Source: Obrimoposthia wandeli (taxonomy: Eukaryota). Taken from it: DNA of 64,000 nucleotides. The first letter of the stretch is position 1. Every line of letters starts with the position of its first letter. The notes beneath the pieces were generated by a model. It was not told where the DNA came from. It ran no database searches and saw nothing but the letters and a program-made list of their open reading frames with translations. Positions 7,063 to 24,142 of this stretch are shown here, one piece after another. Both the position numbers and the translations under genes were made by a program. The DNA lies in assembly GCA_977020255.1 (NCBI GenBank), contig CDROCS010000506.1, forward strand, positions 3,658,001-3,722,000, given 5' to 3'.

Positions 7063-8343
7063 GTGTTAAATATTAAAAGTAGTCAATCTCATTCTCAATC
7101 TAATTTATCTTCTCATTCTAGTTCAGCGCCTTCTAGTTGGAACGCCCATGATACCAAGTGGACGCTCAGTTTATTTGGTACTGCTGTAGGGGCTGGCATA
7201 CTGTTCTTACCTATCAACATTGGTGCTGGTGGATTTTGGCCACTTATTATTATGGCTCTGCTTGCTGGCCCGATGACTTTCTTAGCACACAGAGGTTTAT
7301 CTCGATTCGTACTTTCTTCTAAGCATCCTGAAGCTGACTTTACCGATGTGGTTGAGGAGCACTTTGGCCCTAACGCTGGTCGTATTATCTCTGTGCTTTA
7401 TTTTCTCTCTATTTATCCTATCTTACTGATTTATGGTGTTGGCTTAACTAATACGGTCGATAGCTTTATCGTTAATCAGCTTGGCTTTGCATCACCATCT
7501 CGTGTGTTGCTATCAGGTGTATTGGTTGCGGGTATGGTCGGTGTGATGATGGGCGGAGAAAAATTAGTACTCAAAGCGTTTGAGATAATCGTGTATCCAT
7601 TGGTGCTTATACTGGCTGGTCTATCAATCTATATGATCCAAGATTGGCAATTGCCAGACGTATCAATGGCGACGGATATGGCTGAATTTTCGCGTACATT
7701 ATGGTTAGCGGTACCTGTTACTGTATTTGCGTTTAGCCATGCGGCGGCTATTTCTAGCTTTACGACGGCGCAAAAGCGTCATTACGGTAAACAAGCAGGG
7801 GTTAAATCAGAACAGATCTTGAAACGTACCTCGATCATGCTTATTTCGTTTGTGGTATTTTTTGTTTTTTCTTGTGTGTTTAGCCTAACGCCAGCGCAGT
7901 TGCTAGAAGCTAAAATACAAAATATATCTGTTTTATCGTATCTTGCAAATGTGAAAGATAACGCCTTGATTGCTTCTTTAGGTCCTTTAATCGCTTTCAT
8001 TGCAATTACATCATCATTCTTTGGGCATTTCTTAGGGGCCCGAGAAGGTCTAAATGGCCTAATACGTAAACAAGTTAACATGAAACCTGCGGCGATAAAT
8101 AAGCTGACTATTTTTATATTGTTTACTAGTATCTGGGCTGTTTCAGTGATGAATCCAAGTATTTTAAATATGATGGAAATGTTTTCTGGACCCGTTATTG
8201 CGATGATTTTGTTTGTGATGCCTATGTATGCGATACATAAAGTCGAAGCTTTGGCTCAATACCGTGGCGCGTTAAGTAATATCTTCGTGATGACGATGGG
8301 GTTGATTGCCATCTCAGCGTTAATATTTAACGTGTTCTTATAA
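7063..8343 (+). CDS. HAAAP family serine/threonine-type amino acid:H+ symporter (SdaC/TdcC-like)
   Basis: LFGTAVGAGILFLP, FAFSH, SFFGHFLGAREG; about 11 TM segments. Confidence 0.9.
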   Translation: MLNIKSSQSHSQSNLSSHSSSAPSSWNAHDTKWTLSLFGTAVGAGILFLPINIGAGGFWPLIIMALLAGPMTFLAHRGLSRFVLSSKHPEADFTDVVEEHFGPNAGRIISVLYFLSIYPILLIYGVGLTNTVDSFIVNQLGFASPSRVLLSGVLVAGMVGVMMGGEKLVLKAFEIIVYPLVLILAGLSIYMIQDWQLPDVSMATDMAEFSRTLWLAVPVTVFAFSHAAAISSFTTAQKRHYGKQAGVKSEQILKRTSIMLISFVVFFVFSCVFSLTPAQLLEAKIQNISVLSYLANVKDNALIASLGPLIAFIAITSSFFGHFLGAREGLNGLIRKQVNMKPAAINKLTIFILFTSIWAVSVMNPSILNMMEMFSGPVIAMILFVMPMYAIHKVEALAQYRGALSNIFVMTMGLIAISALIFNVFL

Positions 8344-8390
8344 AAGTATGACGGAATAATAAAAGAAGGGAATGTCAGTTTCTTGAAGGG

Positions 8391-8440
8391 GACTCAATTG
8401 CATATGTGTAAATGACACAGGCAATTGAGTCTTCGTTTCT
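8391..8440 (+). terminator. Long hairpin/intrinsic terminator between convergent genes
   Basis: GACTCAATTGC (8391-8401) / GCAATTGAGTC (8421-8431) with an inner TGTGT/ACACA stem, followed by a T-rich tract. Confidence 0.65.
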
Positions 8441-8469
8441 TTATTGTTACAAGCTATTACTACAAGCGA

Positions 8470-9198
8470 TTATGACGTAGCTTGAATATTCGCTAAACGT
8501 GGTAACTTGCCTTTTAACGCGGTGATATGCAATGTCTTGTTAGACAGATAATCATTCAGTCCATTGTTACGTAATAGACATGCAGGGCAATCGCCACAAC
8601 CTTTCCCAACAACACCGTTATAACAAGTCAGTGATTGGTGCGTCACAAAATCAAGTTCATCATGCAAGTCTGCAAGTGCCCATGTTTCTGCTTTGTTTAA
8701 CCACATTAATGGTGTTTCAAATTTAAACTCTTTCGCCATGCCTAAGTTACAAGCTTGGTTAATCGATTTGATAAATTCATCACGACAATCAGGGTAGCCA
8801 GAGAAATCTGTTTCACATACGCCAGTGATAACCGTGTTAGCACCAACTTGGTAAGCATAGATGCTCGCCAGTGTCATGAAAATGATATTACGACCAGGGA
8901 CAAAAGAATTCGGTAAGCCATTATCCATTAATTCGTGAGATACCGAGATGTCGTCACGTGTTAACGAGCTAATTGCGAGTTCACCAAGCACATCAGCATT
9001 AATGATTTTATGATTTTTAACACCGAAATAAGCCGCTGTTTTCTTCGCTACCTCGATTTCTTGGCTATGACGTTGGCCATAATCAAAGGTAATACAGTCT
9101 ACACTGTCATAACGTTGCAGTGCATCGACTAAACAAGTAGTGCTATCTTGACCACCACTGAATACTAATACGGCTTTGTTTGCTGTCTGCTGTGACAT
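8470..9198 (-). CDS. queC: 7-cyano-7-deazaguanine synthase
   Basis: [22 protein letters not shown], zinc ligands [13 protein letters not shown]. Confidence 0.95.
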
Positions 9199-9460
9199 TT
9201 TTTGTCCTTATATCTATCATAGTAATGCCTTAATGAGGCGATAATAGCACAAGTATATTCAAACACGGCTAAATCGGTGGTTAAAGTCGCTTAAACAATT
9301 GCCTGTCACTGGTTAAAAAAAAACGTAGTAATAGCAACTAGGCAGAATTGATTTGTTTCGGTAGAATGTATAACTGCTGTATATAAACATAGTATATAGC
9401 GATCACGTTTATGTATAAGTTAGCGTTTGCTGGCTTTCTGTTTTATTGGTAAGTATAAGC

Positions 9461-10469: not shown

Positions 10470-11246
10470 ATGTTTAAAAAAATCTTACCTTTAGCGGTAT
10501 TATCATCTTTAATTGTTGGGTGCACAGCATCGCCAACAGGCCGTAATCAAGTGTTATTGTATTCATCTGGTGACATGACACAATTGGGCGCGCAATCATT
10601 CGAACAAATCAAACAGCAAGAAAAAATCAACACAGATCCTAAGGTGAACAATTACGTGCAATGTATCGCTGATACGCTGACGCACTATGTCGATCAATCG
10701 ACTCACTGGGAAGTCATTGTTTTTGATAGCCCACAAGTGAACGCCTTTGCCCTACCGGGTGGTCATATCGGCGTATATACCGGACTATTAAAAGTCGCTA
10801 AAACACCGTCTCAACTTGCCGCGGTAATGGGTCATGAGATCGTGCATGTAACCGCAAATCACAGCAACGAACGTTTATCACAATCTAAGATCACAGGTCT
10901 TGGTTTACAAGTGACAGACTACGCCTTACAAGATCAAGCTTATAAAGACACGGCGATGCAAGCGTTAGGCTTAGGCATTCAATATGGTGTGGCATTACCG
11001 TATGGCCGAACTCAAGAATCGGAAGCGGATATTGTCGGTTTAGAGTTAATGGCGAAAGCTGGTTTCGATCCTCAAGAAAGTGTGGCGTTATGGCAAAATA
11101 TGGCTGCAGCATCAGGCGGAAATCAACCACCTGAATTACTATCGACACATCCATCACACGATACCCGGATTAAAGATTTACGTAAGGCTATTGCTAAGTT
11201 ACCAGCAGAATATCGTCAGCCAAGAGAACTGAGCTGCACGTATTAA
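10470..11246 (+). CDS. M48 family zinc metallopeptidase lipoprotein
   Basis: Lipobox LIVGC, NAFALPGG, HEIVH zinc motif, ESEAD, STHP. Confidence 0.9.
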   Translation: MFKKILPLAVLSSLIVGCTASPTGRNQVLLYSSGDMTQLGAQSFEQIKQQEKINTDPKVNNYVQCIADTLTHYVDQSTHWEVIVFDSPQVNAFALPGGHIGVYTGLLKVAKTPSQLAAVMGHEIVHVTANHSNERLSQSKITGLGLQVTDYALQDQAYKDTAMQALGLGIQYGVALPYGRTQESEADIVGLELMAKAGFDPQESVALWQNMAAASGGNQPPELLSTHPSHDTRIKDLRKAIAKLPAEYRQPRELSCTY

Positions 11247-11299
11247 TTGCAGTTAATTAATGGCTGTAATAAACAAGACAGTAATACAAATTGGTAATA

Positions 11300-11348
11300 A
11301 AAAGGGCGCTCATATATCTACTTAACCTAGTTATATGAGCGCCCTTTT
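11300..11348. terminator. Bidirectional intrinsic terminator
   Basis: 17-bp stem AAAAGGGCGCTCATATA / TATATGAGCGCCCTTTT between convergent genes. Confidence 0.8.
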
Positions 11349-11397
11349 GTATTTTAAAGTGACGTTAATGTTGCTTTAGTTCTACTCTATGTGCGTA

Positions 11398-12753
11398 TTA
11401 CCATGTTTGATAACGCTTCGCGGCATGTTGCTGGCGTTGTATTAATTGTTGTTTACGTTGCTCTGTAGTGAACATTGGAATGTCGGCAGGTAAATGCTGA
11501 CGCAACTCACTGAGTTTAACAACGGTTGTTTCTGGTGTTGTCGAAGTAATTACCTTGTCATCAACGCCACTTTGAATACGTAACATCAATACACCCGTTG
11601 GCGTGCTGCTGGTATCAACCCAATCTTGGATACCGGGATCTTTTGGTGATGCTACGATGTAATAATAACCATCCGCACTCTTATATGCTTGGGCTTTGCC
11701 ATTGCGACCCCAAGAAACACTGCTTTGTGTGTTTACCCAGTCTGGTGATGCAGCCCAATAATTCATGGTATGCAGACCATTATAGTCAGATTCAATTTCC
11801 GGTAGTTTAATGATCATTGCTTCATCGTCTTGCAGATCATAATGACCTAGGCTGTTATATTGCCCTAGAATGCCGATATCACCTGTTGGACGGAATGAAA
11901 TCAAGGTGTTCTCTGGTAACCATGAAATTCTATCGGCAAAATCGGGCCAAAATGTACCTTGGCGTTTTACCATTGATGTTGCATTGTGGATACGCTCTGT
12001 TAATGCAGCTGCGCTGTAAGGTTTGCTTGTAACGCCTTCGGAACCAATGCGCTTAATAGTAATGTTACCCGCTGACTCGGTATTCCAATTAGCGTGAGTA
12101 TGACGAGATATAACAATCAAGTCTTGTTGTTGCTGTGGTAATTCCATCCAGTTGCCCGGTACTTTGTTCTTACTTAGGGTGACGCTAAAATCACCGTCAG
12201 CATCAAATGTCATCTGGTTATCATCAAGAACTGAAACCGCACCTTGTGGGTTTGCCGCTTCAAATAATTCTAGTAAGAAGTCTGCTGTGGTACCGCGATT
12301 ACCTGTGATGATATAGACATTTTCACCGTCTTTATTACTGACATTAGCGGCGCGATAATAAGTGTCTGGATTATCAATACCAATGCGTTTACCGGGATCA
12401 AGTAGGTTACGGAAATGTGGGTAGCTACCATCACCACCTGAGATCGCACCACTCATCGCAGCATTGGTGATTGCAGATAAGAGTTCATAAGCTTCAATGC
12501 GATGTTGTGGGTCGCGCTGGTAAATACTGCTGTCACGGAACTGTTGTTCGACATCACCAAGGGTGGCGTAAAGTTCAGCCCAGGCTTGTTCGAGTGCTTG
12601 TTGATCGGCAACTTCACTTTGTGATGGAGTATCAGTAGTGTTGGCACATGCAGTGAGCAGTCCTGCAAGTAATAAACTACTAACCATTTTAGTATATCGA
12701 CGGCTAATCAAATTCGTTAGTATTTGTTTGAATCGCATAGTGTTGAGTAACAT
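11398..12753 (-). CDS. DUF1214-domain lipoprotein of unknown function
   Basis: Lipobox LLTAC; GIDNPDTYY, GNRGT and DGDFSVTLS...GNWMEL motifs. Confidence 0.65.
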   Translation of the reverse strand: MLLNTMRFKQILTNLISRRYTKMVSSLLLAGLLTACANTTDTPSQSEVADQQALEQAWAELYATLGDVEQQFRDSSIYQRDPQHRIEAYELLSAITNAAMSGAISGGDGSYPHFRNLLDPGKRIGIDNPDTYYRAANVSNKDGENVYIITGNRGTTADFLLELFEAANPQGAVSVLDDNQMTFDADGDFSVTLSKNKVPGNWMELPQQQQDLIVISRHTHANWNTESAGNITIKRIGSEGVTSKPYSAAALTERIHNATSMVKRQGTFWPDFADRISWLPENTLISFRPTGDIGILGQYNSLGHYDLQDDEAMIIKLPEIESDYNGLHTMNYWAASPDWVNTQSSVSWGRNGKAQAYKSADGYYYIVASPKDPGIQDWVDTSSTPTGVLMLRIQSGVDDKVITSTTPETTVVKLSELRQHLPADIPMFTTEQRKQQLIQRQQHAAKRYQTW

Positions 12754-12867
12754 AGGGTAAATGATCCTATTTTTTCACTTAAGAAATATAATTATGATTT
12801 ACTACAGGCCTGTTTCCATACAGTATTTAGCTATAGTGGTATGTGTTATTGGGTACAAAGATTAGTG

Positions 12868-15390: not shown

Positions 15391-16653
15391 ATGAAAATAT
15401 TGCATACCTCAGATTGGCACCTTGGCCAGCATTTCATTACTAAAAGTCGCGCTAACGAACACAGTTGTTTTATGGCTTGGTTACTTGAGCAAGTAGAATT
15501 TCACCAAGTTGATGCAGTTATTGTCGCGGGTGATATTTTTGATACTGGCACGCCGCCAAGTTATGCACGTGAGTTATATAACGGCTTTGTTGTTGCGATG
15601 AGTAAGGTCAACTGTCAGTTAATTATTCTAGCGGGTAATCATGATTCGGTCGCAACACTGAATGAATCTAAACAGTTATTGTCACAGCTTAATACCCAAG
15701 TCATTTCCAGTGTATCGCTCGATTTAGACCAGCAAGTATTGGAACTTAAAAACCGGCAAGGTCAATTGGGTGCATTGTTGTGTGCCGTGCCGTTTGTACG
15801 CCCTCGCGATGTTATGCAAAGTGAAGCATGGCAGTCTGGCACTGAAAAACAGCAGCGTTTAGGTGCGGCGATCACTGAGCATTACGCCAACTTATATAAA
15901 CTGGCCGAGCAAAAGCGTGATGAGCACAATAATGACGAAAATAATGAAAAAAATAGCTCAGTACCGATTATCGCTACTGGTCACTTAACAGCACTCGGTG
16001 TATCGGTGACAGAATCAGTGCGTGACATTTACATTGGTACACTCGAAGCATTCCCAGCGAATCAATTCCCTGCGGCAGACTATATTGCCCTTGGTCATAT
16101 TCATCGCGCGCAAAAAGTCGCTAAATCAGAACATATCCGTTACAGCGGCTCGCCAATCCCACTAAGCTTTGATGAAGTGAAACAGCAAAAGAGCGTTAAC
16201 TTGGTGAATTTTGTTGATGGTAAGTTCGATTCTGTGATGGAATTGACGATCCCACGCTTTCAACCTATGCAGGCGATTAAAGGTAATTTGGAAAGCATTG
16301 AAGCGCAATTAGCCGATTTCAAAAACCATACCGACCCATTACCAGTGTGGTTAAGCATTGAAGTGCAAGAACAAGACTATCTTACTGACTTACAAACTCG
16401 TATTGAAGCCATGACTACAGACCTGCCTGTGGAAGTATTACAAGTACGCCGTGCACGCAAAGACAGAGAACAGCATTTGCATAGTGAAGTGAAAGAAACC
16501 TTATCAGAACTGTCGGTGAATGATGTGTTCGCACGCTGCTTACAAGGTGTTGAATTTACCACTGACGCGGAAATAGCGCGTAAATCACGTATCGAATTAG
16601 CTTTTAAACAAATTGTAGAGCAAGTCGAGCATGCAACGCAGGAGGAAAAATAA
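15391..16653 (+). CDS. sbcD: Exonuclease SbcCD subunit D
   Basis: HTSDWHLG, AGDIFD, GNHDS, GHL, YIALGHIH, RYSGSP. Confidence 0.97.
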   Translation: MKILHTSDWHLGQHFITKSRANEHSCFMAWLLEQVEFHQVDAVIVAGDIFDTGTPPSYARELYNGFVVAMSKVNCQLIILAGNHDSVATLNESKQLLSQLNTQVISSVSLDLDQQVLELKNRQGQLGALLCAVPFVRPRDVMQSEAWQSGTEKQQRLGAAITEHYANLYKLAEQKRDEHNNDENNEKNSSVPIIATGHLTALGVSVTESVRDIYIGTLEAFPANQFPAADYIALGHIHRAQKVAKSEHIRYSGSPIPLSFDEVKQQKSVNLVNFVDGKFDSVMELTIPRFQPMQAIKGNLESIEAQLADFKNHTDPLPVWLSIEVQEQDYLTDLQTRIEAMTTDLPVEVLQVRRARKDREQHLHSEVKETLSELSVNDVFARCLQGVEFTTDAEIARKSRIELAFKQIVEQVEHATQEEK

Positions 16654-19600
16654 TGAAGATTAAACGTCTTTCCTTTAAAAATATTAACTCGTTAAAAGGC
16701 GAGTGGCAGCTTAACTTCGACCAAGAACCATTTTTAAGTAATGGCTTGTTTGCTATTACAGGACCAACGGGCGCGGGTAAAACCACCATTCTTGATGCGA
16801 TTTGTTTGGCTTTGTATCACGAGACACCACGTCTAGCGATATCGAAATCTCAGAATGAGGTTATGACGCGTAATACCGCGGAGTGTGCAGCCGAAGTCGA
16901 ATTTGAAGTACAAGGTAAAGGTTACCGTGCGAGCTGGAGTCAGCGCCGTGCTAAAAACAGTGCGCAGGGCAACTTACAAGAAATGAAAGTAGAATTGGCG
17001 GAAGTGGTGTCGGGTGACATTCTTGCTAGCCAAGTTAAATTGAAAAAGCAGCTGGTGGCAGAAATAACCGGTTTAGATTTTTCACGTTTTCGTAAATCTA
17101 TGCTGTTATCACAAGGTGAATTTGCGGCATTTTTAAATGCCCCAGCTAACGATCGCGCGGAATTATTAGAAGAACTGACAGGCACTGAAATTTATGGTCA
17201 GATCTCGCAAGCAGTATTTGAAAGCCATAATGTCGCGAAAGCAGAATTAGATAAATTACGTGCCAAAGCCGATGGTGTGAACTTATTAAACGACGAGCAG
17301 CGCAGTGAAATTGCCGCAGAGCAAACTCAAGTTAGCGAACAAGTAACGGCATTAACTCAGCAGCAAACAGTGCTACAGCAACAAAAGCAATGGCGCGTAG
17401 AGTTAGAACAAGCAGAGCAAGGTGTTAGTCAGTCGCAAAGCAGTTTAACCACTGCAGAACAGGATACGACAGCGCAACAGCCTGAATTGGATAAGTTAGA
17501 GAAAGCCGAACCTGCTGAAGCATTACGCTTGCCGTTCACGCATTTAAACCAAGCGAACAGTAAATTAGCAGAGTTAGACAAACAGCAACAGGCATTACAG
17601 CTAGTAGTGGCGTCAGCGCAAAGTGCCGTGACAGTTAACCAAGACCAAAGTAAAGTAACTCAAGCACAGTTAGATGATGTTAAGCAGCAAAGCCAAGCGC
17701 AAGAAACTTTAATAAATGAGCAGATCATGCCATTGGATAATGATTGCGCTCAGCTAACAAAAGAGTTACAGCAATGTCAGTCATTACAGCAGCAACAGAA
17801 TAGCGAACAGCAAACGACGCAGCAGCAATTAGCTAAGTTAACGCAAACCGCGCAGCAAGCCCAAAAAACGGTTAATGATTGCCAGGCATATCAACAGCAG
17901 CACAGTAAAGATGCTGAGCTGAGTACACGCTTGCCGTTATGGCAAAGCCAGATCCAGCAATGTAACCAACAGCAACAACACTTAGCGGTATTAAATCAGC
18001 AAGTGGCTGACAACCAAGCGCTGTTAAAGCAAAGCCAAACTTCGCAACAACAATTGTCGACTTCTGTTATGGCAAATAGTGAGCGTCAGCAGTCGGTGAA
18101 CGATGCGGTTAATCAGGCGCAGCAGCAAGTCACGGACTTGTTAGCGGGTGATGATTTAGCAGCGCTTGAGAATGTGTTTAGTCAGCAATCACGCGCGCAA
18201 AGTATTGTGGATCAGTTGTCCGGTTTACAGCAGCGTTATATTAGCGAGTCGCAAGAGTTTGAAGCTAATCGCGCTAACATTAGCGCATTAGAGCAACAGC
18301 TTGTAGGCGTTAACGTTGAGATCGCAGCAAAACGCGACCTGTTTAAAGCCAAGAAACAAGAATTCAACGATGTTCAGCGTTTATTAGAACAAGAACAAAA
18401 AATTGCCAGCTTAGAACAATTACGCAGTCAGCTTGAAGTCGGGCAAGCGTGTCAATTATGTGGTTCAACAGATCATCCGCTGATTGCTGAATATCAGCAG
18501 ATTGGTGAATCGCCAACAGCGCAGCGTAAAGGGCAATTAGAGCTAGCGTTAAAGCAAATTGAAACCGAGGGTGGGGATCTTAAAAGTCAGCTGCAAGTTA
18601 CAAATACCAAGCTAGATAACCTCAACAATCGTAATACGACCTTACAACCGCAGTTAGACTCGTTGATTACCCAATGGCAATCTTACAATCAACAGCTTAA
18701 TGCCAACCTTGTTATTACTGATAGCGCGAGTACGCAGGTATTTGTGCAGCAGCAAGCACAGCAATTAGCGCAATTGTCACAACGCATCCAAAGTTTAAAA
18801 GCCGCAACTGTACAATTACAGCAAGCGCAGCAAGCATTGGTTGAATTTGATAAGCACAGTGCACAACTGCAACATCAAATTGAGTTAGTGAATCGTGACT
18901 TACAAGCAGCTCAAGATACTGAGCAAAAGCTATCAAGCGAAACGCAGCAACAAGGGCAGGTGCTAAGTGAGTTACAACAAGCATTAGCCAATAGCGTGAC
19001 TGAGTTAGGTTTATCATTGCCGCAATGGAGTCAACTCGACAACTGGTTAGCGCAATGCCATCAAGCAACGCAAACATGGGTACAGCAAGCACAGTTATTA
19101 CAGACTGCAAGTGAACAGTTCCTTACTGCAGACAGCCAATTAACGCCATTACGCGAGCAGCAAGTTAAGCTGGACGCGGTTATTGCGCAAAGCCTGACTA
19201 CGTTAACTAATCTGTCGGCGAGTTTGGCTGATAAACAGCAGCAACGTCAGCAGTTATTTGGTCAACGTAGTGTCGCTGATGCAAGGCAGGCGATGCAGCA
19301 GCTGTTAAATAGTGCCGAGCAAGCGCAGCAAGCAAGTACTACGCAAGCGACTGCATTATCGAATCAACTGCACGCGCAGCAAGGTGAGTTAACCACGTTA
19401 CAACAAGGTTTAGCGCAACAGCAGCAAGAATCGGTAGATTGCTTAGGCGTATGGCAACAAGCGCTAGCCGCGAGTCCATTTTCTACTGACGCTGAGTTTA
19501 ACCAAGCGTTGTTACCTCGTGATGAAAAGCAGCGATTATTGGCGCTTAAGTCGCAACTGACTGCTAACTTAACCCGTTGTCAGGCATTGTTTGAGAAAGC

Positions 19601-20324
19601 GAATGAAGGTTTATTAACACTGCAACAAGCACAAGTTACTGAGCTTGAACTGGCGACGATTATTGCGCAGTTAGATGCGATGACAGTCGAACTAAATCAA
19701 GCTTTACAACGTCAAGGTGAGTTGAAACAGCGCCTTGCTGATGATGCCGCCCGCAGTGCTGATTTAGCTGATTTCTATCAACAGATTAAAGATTGTGAAG
19801 CGGATTATGATGACAAAGCTTATCTGCAAAGTTTGATTGGTTCGAAAGACGGTAGCAAGTTCCGCCGCTTTGCGCAGGGCTTAACGCTGGATCATTTGGT
19901 CACCTTAGCCAATCAACAGTTAGACCGTTTACACAGCCGTTATCAGTTGCAACGTAAACTGGCCTCTGGCTCTGAAGCGCTGGCATTACAGGTCGTAGAT
20001 ACTTGGTTGGCCGATGCAGTACGTGATACCAAAACCTTATCAGGCGGTGAAAGTTTCTTGGTGAGCTTGGCATTAGCACTGGGCTTATCTGACTTGGTTA
20101 GCCACAAGACCAGCATTGATTCGTTATTTCTTGATGAAGGTTTCGGCACGCTCGATGCCGAGACATTAGACATCGCCTTGGATGCGCTAGATAACTTAAA
20201 TGCCTCAGGCAAGATGATTGGCGTCATTAGCCATGTTGAAGCATTAAAAGAACGTATTCCGGTGCAAGTTAAAGTGAACAAGGGTAGTGGTTTAGGGTTG
20301 AGCTCATTTGAAGTGGTGAGTTAG
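16653..20324 (+). CDS. sbcC: Exonuclease SbcCD subunit C (Rad50-like ATPase)
   Basis: Walker A GPTGAGKT, SQGEF, long Q-rich coiled coil, zinc hook CQLCG, LSGGE signature, FLDEGFG, ISH; start overlaps sbcD stop. Confidence 0.97.
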   Translation: MKIKRLSFKNINSLKGEWQLNFDQEPFLSNGLFAITGPTGAGKTTILDAICLALYHETPRLAISKSQNEVMTRNTAECAAEVEFEVQGKGYRASWSQRRAKNSAQGNLQEMKVELAEVVSGDILASQVKLKKQLVAEITGLDFSRFRKSMLLSQGEFAAFLNAPANDRAELLEELTGTEIYGQISQAVFESHNVAKAELDKLRAKADGVNLLNDEQRSEIAAEQTQVSEQVTALTQQQTVLQQQKQWRVELEQAEQGVSQSQSSLTTAEQDTTAQQPELDKLEKAEPAEALRLPFTHLNQANSKLAELDKQQQALQLVVASAQSAVTVNQDQSKVTQAQLDDVKQQSQAQETLINEQIMPLDNDCAQLTKELQQCQSLQQQQNSEQQTTQQQLAKLTQTAQQAQKTVNDCQAYQQQHSKDAELSTRLPLWQSQIQQCNQQQQHLAVLNQQVADNQALLKQSQTSQQQLSTSVMANSERQQSVNDAVNQAQQQVTDLLAGDDLAALENVFSQQSRAQSIVDQLSGLQQRYISESQEFEANRANISALEQQLVGVNVEIAAKRDLFKAKKQEFNDVQRLLEQEQKIASLEQLRSQLEVGQACQLCGSTDHPLIAEYQQIGESPTAQRKGQLELALKQIETEGGDLKSQLQVTNTKLDNLNNRNTTLQPQLDSLITQWQSYNQQLNANLVITDSASTQVFVQQQAQQLAQLSQRIQSLKAATVQLQQAQQALVEFDKHSAQLQHQIELVNRDLQAAQDTEQKLSSETQQQGQVLSELQQALANSVTELGLSLPQWSQLDNWLAQCHQATQTWVQQAQLLQTASEQFLTADSQLTPLREQQVKLDAVIAQSLTTLTNLSASLADKQQQRQQLFGQRSVADARQAMQQLLNSAEQAQQASTTQATALSNQLHAQQGELTTLQQGLAQQQQESVDCLGVWQQALAASPFSTDAEFNQALLPRDEKQRLLALKSQLTANLTRCQALFEKANEGLLTLQQAQVTELELATIIAQLDAMTVELNQALQRQGELKQRLADDAARSADLADFYQQIKDCEADYDDKAYLQSLIGSKDGSKFRRFAQGLTLDHLVTLANQQLDRLHSRYQLQRKLASGSEALALQVVDTWLADAVRDTKTLSGGESFLVSLALALGLSDLVSHKTSIDSLFLDEGFGTLDAETLDIALDALDNLNASGKMIGVISHVEALKERIPVQVKVNKGSGLGLSSFEVVS

Positions 20325-20386
20325 TTTTAGCGTGTATCTGTGAGTGATGAATTGAATGGCGATAGTCTGGTACTATCGCCATTTTT
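20247..20386 (+). repeat. Direct repeat copy 1: last 26 codons of sbcC plus terminator
   Basis: Aligns with 22931-23071. Confidence 0.92.
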
Positions 20387-20387
20387 T
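20355..20387 (+). terminator. sbcC intrinsic terminator
   Basis: AATGGCGATAG...CTATCGCCATT followed by TTTT. Confidence 0.8.
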
Positions 20388-20583
20388 CTGTTAATTTAGC
20401 TATATTTTTTTGTTGTATTTTAATTTAGAAAGTAATGCCTTAAATCCACGCAAAATTCATGTCAAATTGTTCCTAGTTTAATTTAAGTAACTTCAGCATT
20501 ATGCAAGAGTTATCAACTTTAAGGGATTTTATAGTGGTATGGATGCAATAGATAACGAATCTTATTTTAAGGCATAATAAAAA

Positions 20584-21192
20584 ATGAAAAAACAATTAGT
20601 ACCAATTTTATTAACTGGATTATTAGCAGCAACGGCACATGCTGAGGTTTATCTCGGTGGTAGTATTGGCCAAGCTCAATTTAAAAATATTGATTTTAGC
20701 GCTGATGCACCAGGCTATTCTGGTTCACAAAGCTATGACTTAGATGAAAGTAGTCTTGCTGGCAGTATTTTCGGTGGCTATAATTTTAATCGTTATATCG
20801 CAGTGGAAGCTACTTTAGGCGGTTTTGATGCCATTGATAAGGATAAATTTTCAATCGGCGATATGATGTATTTTGCAGTGCAACCTAAACTTTCTTTGCC
20901 TGTAACATCAAATTTTAACATTTTCGCAAAAGCTGGCCTAGCTTATGTCAATGCTGAAACAATTGTAAGTAATTCTGTCGTTGGGTTAGCCGGTAACACA
21001 ACTGTTAGTGATACTGTTATTACTGGGATGCTTGGTCTTGGGGCTGAATATGCAATTAATGATCGCGTTAGTTTGAGAGCATCATGGGACTATATGCGCC
21101 CTGAATTTGAATTAGCTAACGTTGCTGGTGCAAGTCTTACTGCTGAACCAGATATGTCTATTTTTTCAGTTGGTATGAGTTACAACTTCTAA
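20584..21192 (+). CDS. OmpA-like 8-stranded outer-membrane beta-barrel (porin family)
   Basis: Signal peptide ending AHA; FGGYNFN, FAKAG, GLGAEY; C-terminal SVGMSYNF. Confidence 0.85.
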   Translation: MKKQLVPILLTGLLAATAHAEVYLGGSIGQAQFKNIDFSADAPGYSGSQSYDLDESSLAGSIFGGYNFNRYIAVEATLGGFDAIDKDKFSIGDMMYFAVQPKLSLPVTSNFNIFAKAGLAYVNAETIVSNSVVGLAGNTTVSDTVITGMLGLGAEYAINDRVSLRASWDYMRPEFELANVAGASLTAEPDMSIFSVGMSYNF

Positions 21193-21205
21193 TCCTAGCT
21201 ATTTT

Positions 21206-21230
21206 AGAGCACTCTAGCATAGAGTGCTCT
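21206..21230 (+). other. Stable hairpin with no U-tract between the omp and sgrR-like genes
   Basis: AGAGCACTCT-agcat-AGAGTGCTCT. Confidence 0.6.
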
Positions 21231-21267
21231 GTGCTATTATGTATAGCAGTAATTAATCAGCTATGGT

Positions 21268-22926
21268 GTGTTTGTGAACGAATCAAATATACGAAGATTA
21301 AAATATCTTCTTAATAGATATGATCTTTATCAAACTTATTCTGTCGCGATTGATGAGCTGGAAGATATACTTTCATCTTCAAGACGGAATATATCGAATA
21401 TAATGAAAAACCTATCTGAGCTTGATTGGATTGAATGGATACCAGCAGTAGGACGAAGTAATACCAATAAGTTGCTGATAAAGTGCAGCTTACAGCAAGC
21501 CATTTCACAATCAATCCGTAATGAACTTTCCCAAGGACGTTTTACACTAATTACCAAGCTACTCAAGACTTACGGGCTTGTAACCGTTAAAGCGTTAGCC
21601 GAAGCAACAGAGCTGCAAAACCAATTGAATGAATTGAACAATCAATTACTTATCGCAGAATACCCTTGGATTGATGAACTTGATCCTGTAAAAACTTTTC
21701 GTTCGGCTGAATTACAAATTATAAAAAGCATCTATGACACTCTAATCAAACAGGATCATGAGGGTAACCTAGAAGCTAATATTGCCCACACTTGGGAAGC
21801 AGTGGATAACGAATTCACTTTTTGGATTAGGTCTGATATCAGTCGCCATGATGGTTTAATACTTTCAATTGAAGATGTCATTAACAGTCTTAAAAGCTTA
21901 TGTAATAGCAAGGGGCCTTTTGAATATATGTTTCAGCAGGTCGTAAGCATTACGAAGCTGTCTTCACAAAGTTTTAAAATTATTCTCAAGTCAGTTAATC
22001 CATTGTTTCTTTATGTATTATCTATGCCTAATGCATCCATCGTAATTAGAGATAAAATGAAGTCTGAAATGGAACGTCATGCCTATATCGGAACAGGACC
22101 ATTTCGAGTTCAATTTTGGAGTTCTGAAGTATTAACTTTACAACGCCATCAAAGCTATTTTTCTCAGAAGGCTTTATTACAACGGATCACGTTATCAACC
22201 CAAGGGCAAGACGTTGTTGATCAAATGAGTTTTAATCAACATGATGGTGTTATAGAAACACATTTTATTAATGCTTTTTCTTATCTTTCCCTACGCTATC
22301 GTGATAATGCTGGAGTTAGCAAAAATACACTAGAACAGTTAGCATATTATATTAATAGAGAGAAGAGTTACGTTGAATCAATGGTGGCTGTTAATGGAGT
22401 TAGTTTCCAGCATGCGGATAAGCTACCGTGTGAGGTCCCTATCTTGAACGGTGAAATAGTGCTGGCGGAACCGGTATGGACAATACCTTACTTAAAGGAT
22501 GTTTCGGAGTGGCTACATCAAACTATCCGTTCTACAGGGTTAGATTTGAAGCTAGTCACATTACAAAATATTAGCGATCCCAGTTCGGTCAGTCATTTAG
22601 CGGATGTTCTTTTTATAGAAAATTTAATTGAGGAACCTGTTGAATATGGAATATATGAGTGGCTTTTGACTGCTTCTGGCCTGTGTTTTGCGTTCACACC
22701 TGCAGATTTTGAACTGCATCTTATAGAAATTGAAAGGGCTGTATCTTTAACTTCGTCGTTACAAGCTCTGCTTAAAGTTGAAAGAAATTTATATGATGAT
22801 TTTTACTGTATTCCTTTATTTTGGGGGAAGGAAGAAATTACACGAACCCAGCAAGTTCAAGGAATACAAGTGCGTAAAACAGGTTATAGTGATTTTGATA
22901 AACTGTGGATATCGAAACCAGGCTGA
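21268..22926 (+). CDS. SgrR-family transcriptional regulator (N-terminal HTH plus family-5 solute-binding domain)
   Basis: SSSRRN..WIEWIPAVGRSN SgrR-type N-terminus; DPV..R.AELQI...YDTL; GTGPFRV SBP_bac_5 motif. Confidence 0.8.
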   Translation: MFVNESNIRRLKYLLNRYDLYQTYSVAIDELEDILSSSRRNISNIMKNLSELDWIEWIPAVGRSNTNKLLIKCSLQQAISQSIRNELSQGRFTLITKLLKTYGLVTVKALAEATELQNQLNELNNQLLIAEYPWIDELDPVKTFRSAELQIIKSIYDTLIKQDHEGNLEANIAHTWEAVDNEFTFWIRSDISRHDGLILSIEDVINSLKSLCNSKGPFEYMFQQVVSITKLSSQSFKIILKSVNPLFLYVLSMPNASIVIRDKMKSEMERHAYIGTGPFRVQFWSSEVLTLQRHQSYFSQKALLQRITLSTQGQDVVDQMSFNQHDGVIETHFINAFSYLSLRYRDNAGVSKNTLEQLAYYINREKSYVESMVAVNGVSFQHADKLPCEVPILNGEIVLAEPVWTIPYLKDVSEWLHQTIRSTGLDLKLVTLQNISDPSSVSHLADVLFIENLIEEPVEYGIYEWLLTASGLCFAFTPADFELHLIEIERAVSLTSSLQALLKVERNLYDDFYCIPLFWGKEEITRTQQVQGIQVRKTGYSDFDKLWISKPG

Positions 22927-22930
22927 AGCG

Positions 22931-23071
22931 AAAGAACGTATTCCAGTGCAAGTTAAAGTGAACAAAGGTAGTGGTTTAGGGCTAAGTTCATTTGAAGTTG
23001 TGAGCTAGTTTTAGCGTGTATCTGTGAGTGATGAATTGAATGGCGATAGGCTTGGTACTATCGCCATTTTT
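22931..23071 (+). repeat. Direct repeat copy 2: orphan sbcC 3' end (KERIPVQVKVNKGSGLGLSSFEVVS*) plus terminator
   Basis: Same peptide as the sbcC C-terminus with 7 synonymous nucleotide differences; the following ~41 nt are identical. Confidence 0.92.
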
Positions 23072-23162
23072 GTATTTGGACTGAAATTGTTTATTTAACA
23101 TATTGTTATTGTAAGTCGAGATTGATATTTTATGGGTGTATTGCTTTGATCTAGAGGAAAAA

Positions 23163-23543
23163 ATGGATATTTTGATCGAACAAGAAATTGCGTTACACCA
23201 GTATGAAACTAGGCAAAGCAAGGCTGATATTGCTCGGCTAATGCATGATGATTTTAGAGAAGTTGGAGAATCAGGAGTTAGTTACGATCTCCAATCGATC
23301 ATTGAAATGATGGGTAATGAGCAACCATCGAATGGCGTTATTCACTCTCAAAATTATGAATGTATTCCGCTTGAAGCATCAGTTCAATTACTGTTATATA
23401 AATCAGCGACAGTTGATGAGTTAGGTAAAAAAAGCCACTTTGCTAAGCGTTCATCTATCTGGGTATTAAATGGAACACAATGGCAATTGAAGTATCATCA
23501 AGGTACTGCTTGTGAGCCGTTTGAATTGATAACTCAACAATGA
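23163..23543 (+). CDS. DUF4440 / NTF2-like small protein
   Basis: LMHDDFREVGESG...RSSIW...WQLKYHQGT; GAGG SD before ATG 23163. Confidence 0.8.
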   Translation: MDILIEQEIALHQYETRQSKADIARLMHDDFREVGESGVSYDLQSIIEMMGNEQPSNGVIHSQNYECIPLEASVQLLLYKSATVDELGKKSHFAKRSSIWVLNGTQWQLKYHQGTACEPFELITQQ

Positions 23544-23602
23544 ACAAATTTGCATAATATACGATTTAACTTAATGCAGTGCAGTGCAAATCAGAGGCTC
23601 TC

Positions 23603-24106
23603 ATGGAAGAACAATCTCAAAAGTATCTCGATACATACCTTAATTCTTTAAGTGATATTGAGCGTCAACAGTATCAATCATTCAGTAGCGACTACTTTTG
23701 TGGCGACGAGCACAACGCTAATTTATGTGCAGAGCTAATCCGTATAGGACAAAAGACGGCTACTTGTAGTTTGAGCCATTGGTATGATTCGGGTGAAGAA
23801 CCTATGCCGACTGTCGGGCATCTACAAGTTGTTGTTGATTGGCACGGTAAACCGATATGTATTATCGAAATAGATTCCGTTGAACGCTGTCAGTACAACG
23901 AGGTTACGGCTGAGTTTGCTCATGCTGAAGGCGAGGGTGATCGCTCACTGGCATGGTGGCGTAAAGCGCATTGGAACTTCTTCGCAAAAGAATGTACTGA
24001 ATTGGCCATAGAACCTAATAATGAGATGATGCTGGTATTAGAGCGCTTTCATGTTGTCTATGATCTAGATAATGCCACTCAACAAGCTATACGGACAATT
24101 ATATAA
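23603..24106 (+). CDS. ASCH domain protein
   Basis: GQKTATCS, AEGEGDRSLAWWRKAH; GAGG SD before ATG 23603. Confidence 0.85.
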   Translation: MEEQSQKYLDTYLNSLSDIERQQYQSFSSDYFCGDEHNANLCAELIRIGQKTATCSLSHWYDSGEEPMPTVGHLQVVVDWHGKPICIIEIDSVERCQYNEVTAEFAHAEGEGDRSLAWWRKAHWNFFAKECTELAIEPNNEMMLVLERFHVVYDLDNATQQAIRTII

Positions 24107-24114
24107 TATAAATA

Positions 24115-24142
24115 ACATCATATAAATTACATCATATAAATT
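24115..24142 (+). repeat. Tandem 14-bp repeat (2 copies)
   Basis: ACATCATATAAATT x2 in an intergenic spacer. Confidence 0.8.

What the first reader, a model, noticed from the sequence alone, without database searches (positions are those of the whole stretch)
20247..23071. Insert bracketed by two different alleles of the sbcC 3' end: footprint of integrase-free gene capture
Seen: the last 25 sense codons, the stop and the terminator of sbcC are repeated 2684 bp downstream. In the coding part there are 7 nucleotide differences and all are synonymous (CCG/CCA, AAG/AAA, TTG/CTA, AGC/AGT, GTG/GTT, AGT/AGC). The next ~41 non-coding nt are identical. At the junction copy 2 reads GCT GAA GCG AAA versus GTT GAA GCA TTA AAA, and the sgrR-like stop codon TGA lies inside the shared TGAAGC microhomology. 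Between the copies are only an OMP gene and an SgrR-like gene, with no integrase or transposase. Inference: synonymous-only divergence means both copies evolved as functional sbcC ends in different lineages. That fits homology-facilitated illegitimate recombination: a donor sbcC-omp-sgrR segment was anchored by homology in sbcC and joined at a microhomology into the recipient's own sbcC end. An eroded element using sbcC as attB is the alternative. The repeats could also allow RecA-mediated excision.
Basis: partly seen in the sequence, partly recalled or inferred. Interest (0 to 1): 0.7.

Follow-up and report, generated by a model that had tools for sequence, protein, structure and literature searches.

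The report
Recombination scar behind sbcC holding foreign genes
In a Moritella chromosome, a two-gene module of Vibrio type sits right after the DNA-repair gene sbcC, between two slightly different natural versions of the sbcC tail, with no integrase; this is a clean scar of gene capture by recombination, a known kind of event rather than a new mechanism.

Summary
Window 20247-20368 and 22931-23052 are a direct repeat 2684 nt apart. With one 1-nt gap the repeat runs to 20386/23071. Each copy holds the last 25 codons and stop of sbcC plus its terminator. All 7 coding differences are synonymous (chance 2e-4), followed by a 44-nt identical core. Only an OmpA-like barrel gene and an SgrR-family regulator gene lie between the copies.

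The chromosome is Moritella-like. None of 13 Moritellaceae species has the cargo, and two of them show the empty site (sbcC then DUF4440). The cargo is a conserved adjacent gene pair of Vibrionaceae, about 65% identical in protein at best. An independent metagenome holds the structure at 99.85% identity.

Moritella sp. JT01 carries a second, independent scar behind sbcC. It has different cargo and a different breakpoint (-148 instead of -77), and again only synonymous differences. Both "parent" arrangements exist in sister species. No tyrosine recombinase lies near sbcC in 12 of 13 relatives, and this chromosome shows only XerC/XerD-like ones plus a fragment.

The best reading is a homology-anchored illegitimate join (HFIR type) between two lineages' versions of a strain-variable region. 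Not resolved: which copy is resident, whether a circle with a single crossover was the route, and whether TGAAGC was really used. This is a new member of a known kind, of moderate interest.

The parts
15391..16653 (+). sbcD (nuclease subunit)
   Evidence: Pfam Metallophos + SbcD_C
16653..20324 (+). sbcC, intact at 1223 aa, the same length as in Moritella sp. PE36 and JT01
   Evidence: Pfam AAA_23 and SbcC_Walker_B; ORFs; 86% aa identity to the Moritella C-terminal part
20247..20386 (+). Copy 1 of the repeat. It comprises the functional sbcC tail (25 codons + TAG, 20247-20324), the identical core 20322-20365, and the terminator hairpin 20354-20384 with loop TCTGG followed by a T-run.
20387..20465 (.). 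Left junction zone. Similarity to copy 2 and to relatives ends after the T-run. Clear similarity to the Vibrio omp upstream region starts at about 20466.
20466..20583 (+). Upstream (regulatory) region of the omp gene, alignable with the Vibrio G154 locus. It came in with the cargo.
   Evidence: weak promoter-like site 20549-20578
20584..21192 (+). Cargo gene 1: OmpA-like 8-strand outer-membrane barrel, 202 aa
   Evidence: Pfam OmpA_membrane 6e-24; 65% aa identity to the Vibrio G154 gene at the same relative position; not found in 13 Moritellaceae
21205..21231 (+). 12-bp hairpin between the two cargo genes
21274..22926 (+). Cargo gene 2: SgrR-family regulator (SgrR_N + SBP_bac_5). The likely start is the GTG at 21274 (550 aa, as in its closest homologs); the mechanical ORF starts at 21268. 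The C-terminus is complete to the last residue, and the gene has no terminator of its own.
22924..22930 (+). Right joint. The stop codon TGA lies inside TGAAGC, followed by G, and sbcC-tail homology then begins. One Leu codon of sbcC is missing here.
22931..23071 (+). Copy 2 of the repeat. It comprises the orphan sbcC tail (22931-23008, reading frame still open, not attached to a gene), the identical core 23006-23049, and the terminator 23038-23069 with loop GGCTTGG. This loop is identical to that of relative G008 and 1 nt from that of G006. Copy 2 serves as the only terminator behind the SgrR-like gene.
23136..23543 (+). DUF4440 gene, the neighbour of sbcC in empty-site relatives G006 and G005

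Best explanation
The structure is a recombination scar. It is not a mobile element and not a local duplication that diverged in place.

The stretch behind sbcC is a strain-variable string of small accessory genes in Moritella. DNA from another Moritella lineage, carrying a different version of this stretch, was recombined in. One side used ordinary RecA homology, and sbcC itself is the obvious long anchor. The other side was an illegitimate join that fell between the stop codon of the SgrR-like gene and position -77 of an sbcC tail. The result is two natural alleles of the sbcC tail and terminator in direct order around a 2.5-kb omp + SgrR-like module.

That module came originally from a Vibrio-like source, together with its own upstream region. 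The proximal allele keeps sbcC intact. The distal orphan now supplies the terminator for the SgrR-like gene.

Shown: the repeat, the synonymous-only divergence, the foreign origin of the cargo, the empty sites, the absence of recombinase genes, and a second scar in JT01 with another breakpoint.

Inferred: the anchored-plus-illegitimate route, the intra-genus donor, and use of the 6-nt microhomology.

Not determined: whether the omp-SgrR side or the DUF4440 side was the incoming DNA.
For: - The repeat and the 7 of 7 synonymous differences are confirmed, p about 2e-4. If copy 2 had decayed in place, even 3-4 changes being all synonymous has p 0.006-0.02.
- The cargo is absent from 13 Moritellaceae (best 29% aa) and from non-Vibrio genomes in an order-wide sample of 401. 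It is present as an adjacent omp + SgrR-like pair in Vibrionaceae: 45 of 401 species have the regulator, and omp lies directly upstream in 19 of the 30 best loci. The best match is 64-65% aa for both genes. The omp upstream DNA is alignable with the Vibrio locus.
- Empty sites exist in G006 and G005, and gene content behind sbcC varies in every species. Among near-identical strains in public runs, the ASCH gene is present or absent, and in one strain sbcC joins straight to ASCH.
- JT01 has a second scar. A 51-nt piece of sbcC (-148 to -98) plus the terminator lies 1.58 kb downstream, behind YtoQ-like and glyoxalase-like genes, and 4 of 4 internal differences are synonymous. G010 has sbcC-YtoQ-glyoxalase without a scar. 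G012 has sbcC followed directly by the giant ORF that follows the scar in JT01.
- The different breakpoints (-77 and -148) argue against a fixed att site.
- sbcCD is strongly mosaic between species, with 100% identical blocks next to 80% blocks, so recombination in this gene is frequent.
- No tyrosine recombinase lies on the same contig or within 100 kb of sbcC in 12 of 13 relatives. Contig C506 shows only XerC/XerD-like hits plus a fragment, none of them in the window.
- HFIR and its proposed natural footprints of displaced 3' ends are documented (PMC3240628; PMC5361080; PMC2884548).
Against: - No conspecific empty-site genome was available, so no donor tract or crossover inside sbcC could be shown.
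- Polarity is unresolved.
- In the E. coli conjugation study, HFIR gave deletions, and duplications of the homologous segment came from single crossovers with circular molecules. The left-anchored version therefore needs the heteroduplex to stop short of the end of homology.
- The 44-nt core is identical although the coding part differs by 9%. This could mark a later crossover or conversion rather than two intact alleles.
- TGAAGC fits only with an extra 3-nt deletion, and the chance level is 3-5%.
- One contig of run X2 shows a copy-2-type loop and tail on the proximal side of the insert, which the simple model does not predict.
Confidence: 0.5

Rival explanations
1. Campbell-type integration. 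A circular DNA molecule carried a fragment of a foreign sbcC tail (-77 to the terminator) plus omp and the SgrR-like gene. It could have been an excised or circularised chromosomal fragment, or a non-replicating plasmid. It recombined once with the resident sbcC tail inside the roughly 140-nt homology, probably in the 44-nt identical core. This duplicated the tail.
For: A duplication of exactly the shared segment around the insert is what single crossovers with circles produce. In E. coli, 56 of 60 recombinants were such duplications of 109-950 bp (PMC3240628). The 44-nt identical core lies between diverged coding letters and diverged loops, which is where a crossover would sit. Distant paralogues of the regulator lie on Vibrio megaplasmids.
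Against: The homology is very short and only 93% identical. A circle made of Moritella sbcC tail plus Vibrio-type cargo must first arise. JT01 would need a second such circle with another end point. No plasmid or circle junction was seen in the runs.
Confidence: 0.2
2. One-step illegitimate insertion of the Vibrio-type DNA that duplicated about 140 nt of target, so the two copies were identical at birth. Ordinary homologous recombination with another strain later replaced the 3' part of sbcC up to the core, which gave copy 1 its different synonymous letters.
For: sbcCD is highly mosaic between species. All 7 coding differences lie left of a 44-nt identical core. A strain in run X2 has a copy-2-type loop and tail next to the insert, as expected if the copies were once identical there.
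Against: It needs two events at each of two loci (the window and JT01). The loop and tail differences of copy 1 then need extra mutations: 2 events in a 6-nt loop and 3 in 4 nt. Target duplications of over 100 nt are not a usual product of illegitimate insertion.
Confidence: 0.12
3. Eroded site-specific element. An integrative element used the sbcC tail as attB and carried a surrogate tail, as prophage e14 does with icd and icdC. It later lost its integrase, leaving attL and attR around two cargo genes (a CIME-like remnant).
For: An insert between a gene's functional 3' end and an orphan copy that differs mostly by synonymous letters is exactly the e14/icd-icdC picture (PMC13626634). There is a 44-nt identical core.
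Against: No recombinase gene lies in the insert, in the window, or apart from XerC/XerD-like hits on the whole contig. No integrase was found near sbcC in 12 of 13 relatives; the one exception is 25 kb away in G001. The JT01 scar has another boundary and ordinary Moritella cargo. The right end of the cargo is a gene's stop codon, not an element end. Serine recombinases and DDE transposases were not searched for genome-wide.
Confidence: 0.08
4. Assembly artefact. Two strains' sbcC tails were joined wrongly, or a free circle was inserted by the assembler.
For: The assembly is a mixed, metagenome-like one: 6912 contigs and many bacterial genomes, including a second Moritella-like sbcC on C5394. 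The k=31 contigs cannot phase across the 44-nt core.
Against: The contig is over 3.7 Mb. An independent metagenome has a single contig running from the core through loop 1, the insert and the copy-2 coding letters to the core. Depth is even across the stretch in X21. The right joint (SgrR stop to copy 2) is inside contigs in both runs.
Confidence: 0.03

Closest known systems
Homology-facilitated illegitimate recombination (HFIR), shown experimentally in Acinetobacter baylyi, Streptococcus pneumoniae, Pseudomonas stutzeri and E. coli conjugation (PMC3240628; references listed in PMC5361080)
   Same: Foreign DNA enters without any recombinase of its own. One side is ordinary homology (here sbcC or the downstream genes). 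The other side is a join with little or no homology (0-6 nt here).
   Different: The experimental products are mostly insertion-deletions. Here the product carries a direct repeat of the anchor's end. No experiment or donor/recipient pair is available here, and the direction is unknown.
Displaced ('orphan') 3' ends in Rhs, CDI and T6SS effector-immunity loci, proposed to arise by HFIR (Kirchberger et al. 2017, PMC5361080, and papers cited there)
   Same: A constant upstream gene part serves as the anchor. New downstream modules arrive and push the old 3' end further down, where it remains as an orphan fragment. There is no integrase.
   Different: Those are polymorphic toxin loci with variable 3' ends under diversifying selection. 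Here the gene is a housekeeping nuclease subunit whose two tails encode the same protein, and the cargo is an unrelated omp-regulator pair.
Prophage e14 in icd of E. coli K-12 (icd plus the icdC pseudogene; Hill et al. 1989, as described in PMC13626634)
   Same: An insert lies between a functional gene tail and an orphan copy of that tail, and the two differ mainly by synonymous letters. Recombination between the copies can remove the insert and leave an intact gene.
   Different: e14 is 15 kb and brings its own integrase and a fixed att site. Here the insert is 2.5 kb with two genes and no recombinase, and the second case in the genus has another breakpoint.
Single-crossover (Campbell-type) integration of circular DNA with duplication of the homologous segment (PMC3240628)
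   Same: A direct repeat of exactly the shared segment brackets the inserted DNA.
   Different: No circular donor is known here, and the homology is only about 140 nt at 93% identity.

Membership tests
HFIR-type recombination scar | Long homology to the recipient on one side of the incoming DNA (the anchor) | tested here: met
   The insert abuts sbcC (3.7 kb, shared by all Moritella at 72-91% nt) on the left and conserved small genes on the right.
HFIR-type recombination scar | The other side is joined at no homology or a few nt of microhomology | tested here: met
   The joint lies at 22924-22930, between the SgrR-like stop and sbcC -77. At most TGAAGC is shared, and only with a 3-nt gap. The chance of such a match is 3-5%.
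HFIR-type recombination scar | A tract of donor alleles in the anchor, ending at a crossover | tested here: inconclusive
   The two tails are different alleles. A scan along sbcC against relatives 88% identical shows no breakpoint. No conspecific empty-site genome could be read.
HFIR-type recombination scar | Loss of recipient DNA between the anchor and the joint (the usual product) | tested here: inconclusive
   In the left-anchored reading the product is a duplication, not a deletion. In the right-anchored reading the lost DNA is unknown (one search gives the expectation).
HFIR-type recombination scar | No site specificity: independent events have different joints | tested here: met
   The window joint is at -77 and the JT01 joint at -148 relative to the sbcC stop. 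This rests on two events only.
Site-specific integrative element (e14-like, or an integrase-less CIME remnant) | A recombinase gene in the element, or in related elements at the same site | tested here: not met
   No recombinase lies in the insert. PF00589 gives no hit in the window, and only XerC/XerD-like hits plus a fragment on C506. Nothing lies near sbcC in 12 of 13 relatives. Serine recombinases were not searched.
Site-specific integrative element (e14-like, or an integrase-less CIME remnant) | The same att boundaries in independent insertions | tested here: not met
   The boundaries are -77 in the window and -148 in JT01, with different cargo.
Site-specific integrative element (e14-like, or an integrase-less CIME remnant) | An identical core sequence in both flanking repeats | tested here: met
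   The 44-nt core is identical at 20322-20365 and 23006-23049. This feature is also compatible with the other models.
Transposon or insertion sequence | A transposase gene, terminal inverted repeats and a short target duplication | tested here: not met
   There is no transposase domain and there are no inverted repeats at the insert ends. The repeat is 122-141 nt and diverged.
Integron gene cassette | attC recombination sites between cassettes and an intI gene nearby | tested here: not met
   There is no repeated inter-gene element in 16-26 kb and no tyrosine recombinase in the window. attC structure models were not run.
SgrR-family regulator (cargo gene 2) | An N-terminal SgrR_N DNA-binding domain plus a family-5 solute-binding domain, about 550 aa | tested here: met
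   Pfam PF12793 at 2.6e-14 and PF00496 at 2.5e-17. The protein aligns full-length with 550-557-aa Vibrio proteins.

The most novel reading that the evidence does not exclude
The sbcC tail and terminator may be a recurrent landing pad. Moritella strains would repeatedly stack or swap accessory genes behind it through homology-anchored illegitimate joins, leaving displaced sbcC tails as in Rhs or T6SS orphan arrays, but at a housekeeping gene. The same integrase-free process may have made several other islets bracketed by duplicated gene ends in this chromosome, which has only XerC/XerD-like recombinases; earlier unverified notes describe such islets at nrdD and yfbR on this chromosome and at rnpB on another contig of the assembly. 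A further speculative twist is that SbcCD is itself a nuclease reported to suppress HFIR (Harms and Wackernagel 2008, cited in PMC8116780).
Probability: 0.2. Interest if true: 0.6.

Novelty: new member of a known kind. Interest (0 to 1): 0.4.

Why it matters
Most accessory genes in bacterial chromosomes have no visible mobile element beside them, and natural scars that show how they got in are rare. Here the joint, both alleles of the anchor, the empty site, the foreign source of the cargo and a second independent event in the genus are all readable. This makes the locus a good natural test case for how often homology-anchored illegitimate recombination, as opposed to single crossovers with circles, builds variable regions. 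It also shows an inter-family transfer, from a Vibrio-type source to Moritella, of a regulator-porin pair complete with its control region. It does not reveal a new mechanism.

Tried and rejected
- A SNP-density scan along sbcD-sbcC against the four closest species was uninformative. Identity stayed at 80-95% throughout with no usable breakpoint.
- Polarising the 7 diagnostic letters with 13 species failed because the sites are homoplastic. There is only a slight lean towards copy 2 being clade-typical.
- A scan of JGI metagenome contigs for a 20-nt word of the core gave 4 hits, all chance matches with no sbcC context.
I therefore could not read the contigs of the identical Logan protein P0001 or the Vibrio aestuarianus neighbourhoods through that route.
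The earlier notes on similar islets (nrdD and yfbR on C506, rnpB on another contig) could not be checked.
- I looked for flanking repeats around the module in the best Vibrio locus and found none.
- Rfam and tRNA scans of the region gave nothing above threshold, so this is not a tRNA or sRNA attachment site.
- In-place divergence of a local duplication is rejected on the synonymous-only pattern.
- A transposon and an integron cassette are rejected for lack of their defining parts.
- The papers by de Vries and Wackernagel 2002 and Prudhomme et al. 2002 are not held in the library. Details of HFIR joints therefore rest on PMC3240628 and on citing papers.

Full report
**What is there**

The window is part of a contig of more than 3.7 Mb (C506) in a mixed assembly of 1.35 Gb. 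Its sbcC C-terminal part is 86% identical in protein to Moritella sp. PE36 and JT01, so the replicon is a Moritella-like chromosome.

The genes around the finding are as follows:
- sbcD, 15391-16653
- sbcC, 16653-20324, 1223 aa and intact
- an OmpA-like 8-strand barrel gene, 20584-21192
- an SgrR_N + SBP_bac_5 regulator gene, 21268-22926; alignment with homologs puts the likely start at the GTG at 21274, giving 550 aa
- a DUF4440 gene, 23136-23543

**The repeat**

The repeat finder gives 20247-20368 against 22931-23052: 122 nt, 93% identical, spacing 2684. With one 1-nt gap in the hairpin loop, the homology runs on to 20386/23071 (141 nt).

The first 78 nt are the last 25 codons and the stop of sbcC. 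The 7 differences are all synonymous. When the same number of transitions and transversions is placed at random, all are synonymous in only 0.019% of trials.

Next come 44 identical nt: the stop codon plus 41 non-coding nt. The hairpin loop then differs (TCTGG against GGCTTGG), and the stem and T-run are identical again. Both copies fold as intrinsic terminators.

**Is it an assembly error?**

Run X21, probably the source, covers the stretch without differences except three letters at 23128-23135. Run X1, a marine metagenome from another study, has a 2700-nt contig covering 20336-23035 with 4 differences. That contig runs from the core through loop 1, the whole insert and the copy-2 coding letters to the core. 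X1 also has a 322-nt contig covering 20030-20351 with no differences.

These k-mer contigs necessarily break in the 44-nt core, so they do not phase the copies. Together with the multi-megabase contig, however, an artefact is unlikely.

**Where the cargo comes from**

I searched 13 Moritellaceae species. None has the insert at DNA level. The best protein matches to the regulator are 21-30% identical paralogues, and the barrel protein has no real match.

The closest regulator homologs are Vibrio proteins of 550-557 aa. The best, at 65%, are named Vibrio aestuarianus by their source. In a sample of 401 Vibrionaceae species, 45 have the regulator. In the 30 best loci the barrel gene lies directly upstream, in the same orientation, in 19. 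The best locus is 64-65% identical for both proteins.

A sample of 401 genomes from the whole order found the regulator only in those same Vibrionaceae genomes. In Vibrio the pair sits in at least six different neighbourhoods. Distant paralogues lie on megaplasmids.

About 120 nt upstream of the omp start is still alignable between the Moritella insert and the Vibrio locus, so the module arrived with its control region. The regulator's C-terminus matches its homologs to the last residue. The right end of the cargo is therefore its stop codon, and the orphan sbcC terminator is the only terminator behind it.

**The site**

Relatives G006 and G005 have the empty arrangement, with sbcC and its terminator followed directly by DUF4440. 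In every species the DNA behind sbcC is a different string of small, co-directional accessory genes: DUF4440, ASCH, Ogt-like, glyoxalase, NUDIX, YtoQ, and LysR with a choloylglycine-type hydrolase in G011.

Near-identical strains in public runs also differ here:
- X2 has a strain in which the sbcC stop is followed after 30 nt by the ASCH gene.
- X1 has a strain lacking the ASCH gene.
- In X2 the insert is at roughly one seventh of the depth of sbcC.
- X4 holds a copy of the regulator gene only 94.7% identical.

The site is therefore a hotspot, and the module exists in more than one lineage.

**A second scar**

A self-comparison of each genome's sbcC end with its downstream DNA found one more case, in Moritella sp. 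JT01. A 51-nt piece of sbcC (-148 to -98) is fused at a TGGCG microhomology to a copy of the terminator. It lies 1.58 kb downstream of sbcC, behind YtoQ-like and glyoxalase-like genes. The four internal differences from the resident sbcC are all synonymous.

Sister species show both parent arrangements:
- G010, whose sbcC is 94.6% identical, has sbcC-YtoQ-glyoxalase without a scar.
- G012 has sbcC followed directly by the giant ORF that follows the scar in JT01. G010 lacks that ORF.

The process is therefore recurrent. It is not tied to one breakpoint, and it joins two naturally occurring versions of the variable region.

**Recombinases**

There are none in the insert. PF00589 finds only XerC/XerD-like genes and a fragment on the whole contig C506, and nothing in the window. 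In 12 of 13 relatives no tyrosine recombinase lies on the same contig or within 100 kb of sbcC. In G001 one lies about 25 kb downstream. Serine recombinases and DDE transposases were not searched genome-wide.

**Mechanism**

The synonymous-only pattern, seen twice, means that both tails evolved as working sbcC ends, so divergence in place is rejected. The scattered breakpoints, the lack of recombinases and the visible parent arrangements favour a homology-anchored illegitimate join of HFIR type. This agrees with the proposals made for displaced 3' ends in Rhs, CDI and T6SS loci (PMC5361080) and for small variable segments (PMC2884548).

Three things remain open.

1. Polarity. The same structure arises in two ways. 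Alternatively, the orphan tail with the DUF4440 side may have come in anchored on the right. The 7 letters compared with 13 species lean only slightly towards copy 2 being clade-typical. The scan along sbcC shows no breakpoint at this divergence.
2. Route. In the E. coli conjugation study, duplications of the homologous segment came from single crossovers with circles, and true HFIR gave deletions (PMC3240628). A Campbell-type route through the 44-nt core is therefore a serious rival.
3. Microhomology. TGAAGC fits only if the orphan also lost the following Leu codon, and such a match arises by chance in 3-5% of trials.

One X2 contig has a copy-2-type loop and tail next to the insert. This hints at conversion between the copies, or at copies that were once identical there. 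I could not follow it up.

**Comparison and verdict**

The picture of an insert between a working gene tail and an orphan tail that differs by synonymous letters is classical for prophage e14 in icd (PMC13626634). That element has its own integrase and a fixed site, and both features were tested here and not met.

The nearest known kind is the HFIR-type displaced 3' end. This case is a new member of that kind, at a housekeeping gene, with an inter-family cargo and a sister scar in the genus. It is a tidy natural example rather than a new mechanism.

The single read laying and sequencing-run runs were used.

Noticed in passing
L006 (Moritella sp. JT01) 11198-12852: A second sbcC-tail scar. A 51-nt piece of sbcC (-148 to -98) plus a terminator copy lies 1.58 kb behind sbcC, after YtoQ-like and glyoxalase-like genes. 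It carries an internal deletion at a TGGCG microhomology, and its differences from the resident sbcC are synonymous only.
   Followed up: yes
L163 (G011) 7315-9400: In relative G011, a LysR-type regulator gene and a choloylglycine-hydrolase-family gene lie between the sbcC stop codon and a copy of the usual sbcC terminator. No part of the sbcC tail is duplicated there.
   Followed up: partly
window 20466-20583 and L171 6775-6900: The roughly 120 nt upstream of the omp gene is conserved between the Moritella insert and a Vibrio locus whose proteins are only 65% identical. It is a candidate operator or promoter for the adjacent SgrR-like regulator.
   Followed up: partly
window 23128-23135: Three letters within 8 nt, just before the DUF4440 gene, differ between the window and runs X21 and X4. 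X1 agrees with the window. This is a small strain-polymorphic cluster.
   Followed up: no
window 23528-24125 and 20326-23593: Public runs hold strains that lack the ASCH-domain gene (X1) and strains in which the sbcC stop joins almost directly to the ASCH gene (X2). This shows presence/absence variation of single small genes among near-identical strains.
   Followed up: partly
G000 contig C506 as a whole: The PF00589 search shows only XerC-like, XerD-like and one fragmentary tyrosine recombinase on this chromosome of more than 3.7 Mb. Earlier unverified notes of this scan nevertheless describe other islets bracketed by duplicated gene ends: nrdD just before the window and yfbR at about 0.98 Mb on C506, and rnpB on another contig of the assembly.
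   Followed up: no
G000 contigs C5394, C4771, C253: The assembly holds further bacterial genomes with their own sbcC, 80%, 74% and 70% identical at nucleotide level. There are 15 nrdD hits and about 100 integrase hits spread over many contigs. G000 therefore behaves like a metagenome or holobiont assembly rather than one organism.
   Followed up: partly
window 21205-21231: A perfect 12-bp hairpin lies between the omp stop and the SgrR-like start. It has no T-run and may be an attenuator or a processing site within the module.
   Followed up: no
L006 13070 onward and G012 C1 1617122-1619754: A giant ORF of more than 1500-2000 aa follows sbcC directly in G012 and follows the scar in JT01. It was not annotated here.
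   Followed up: no
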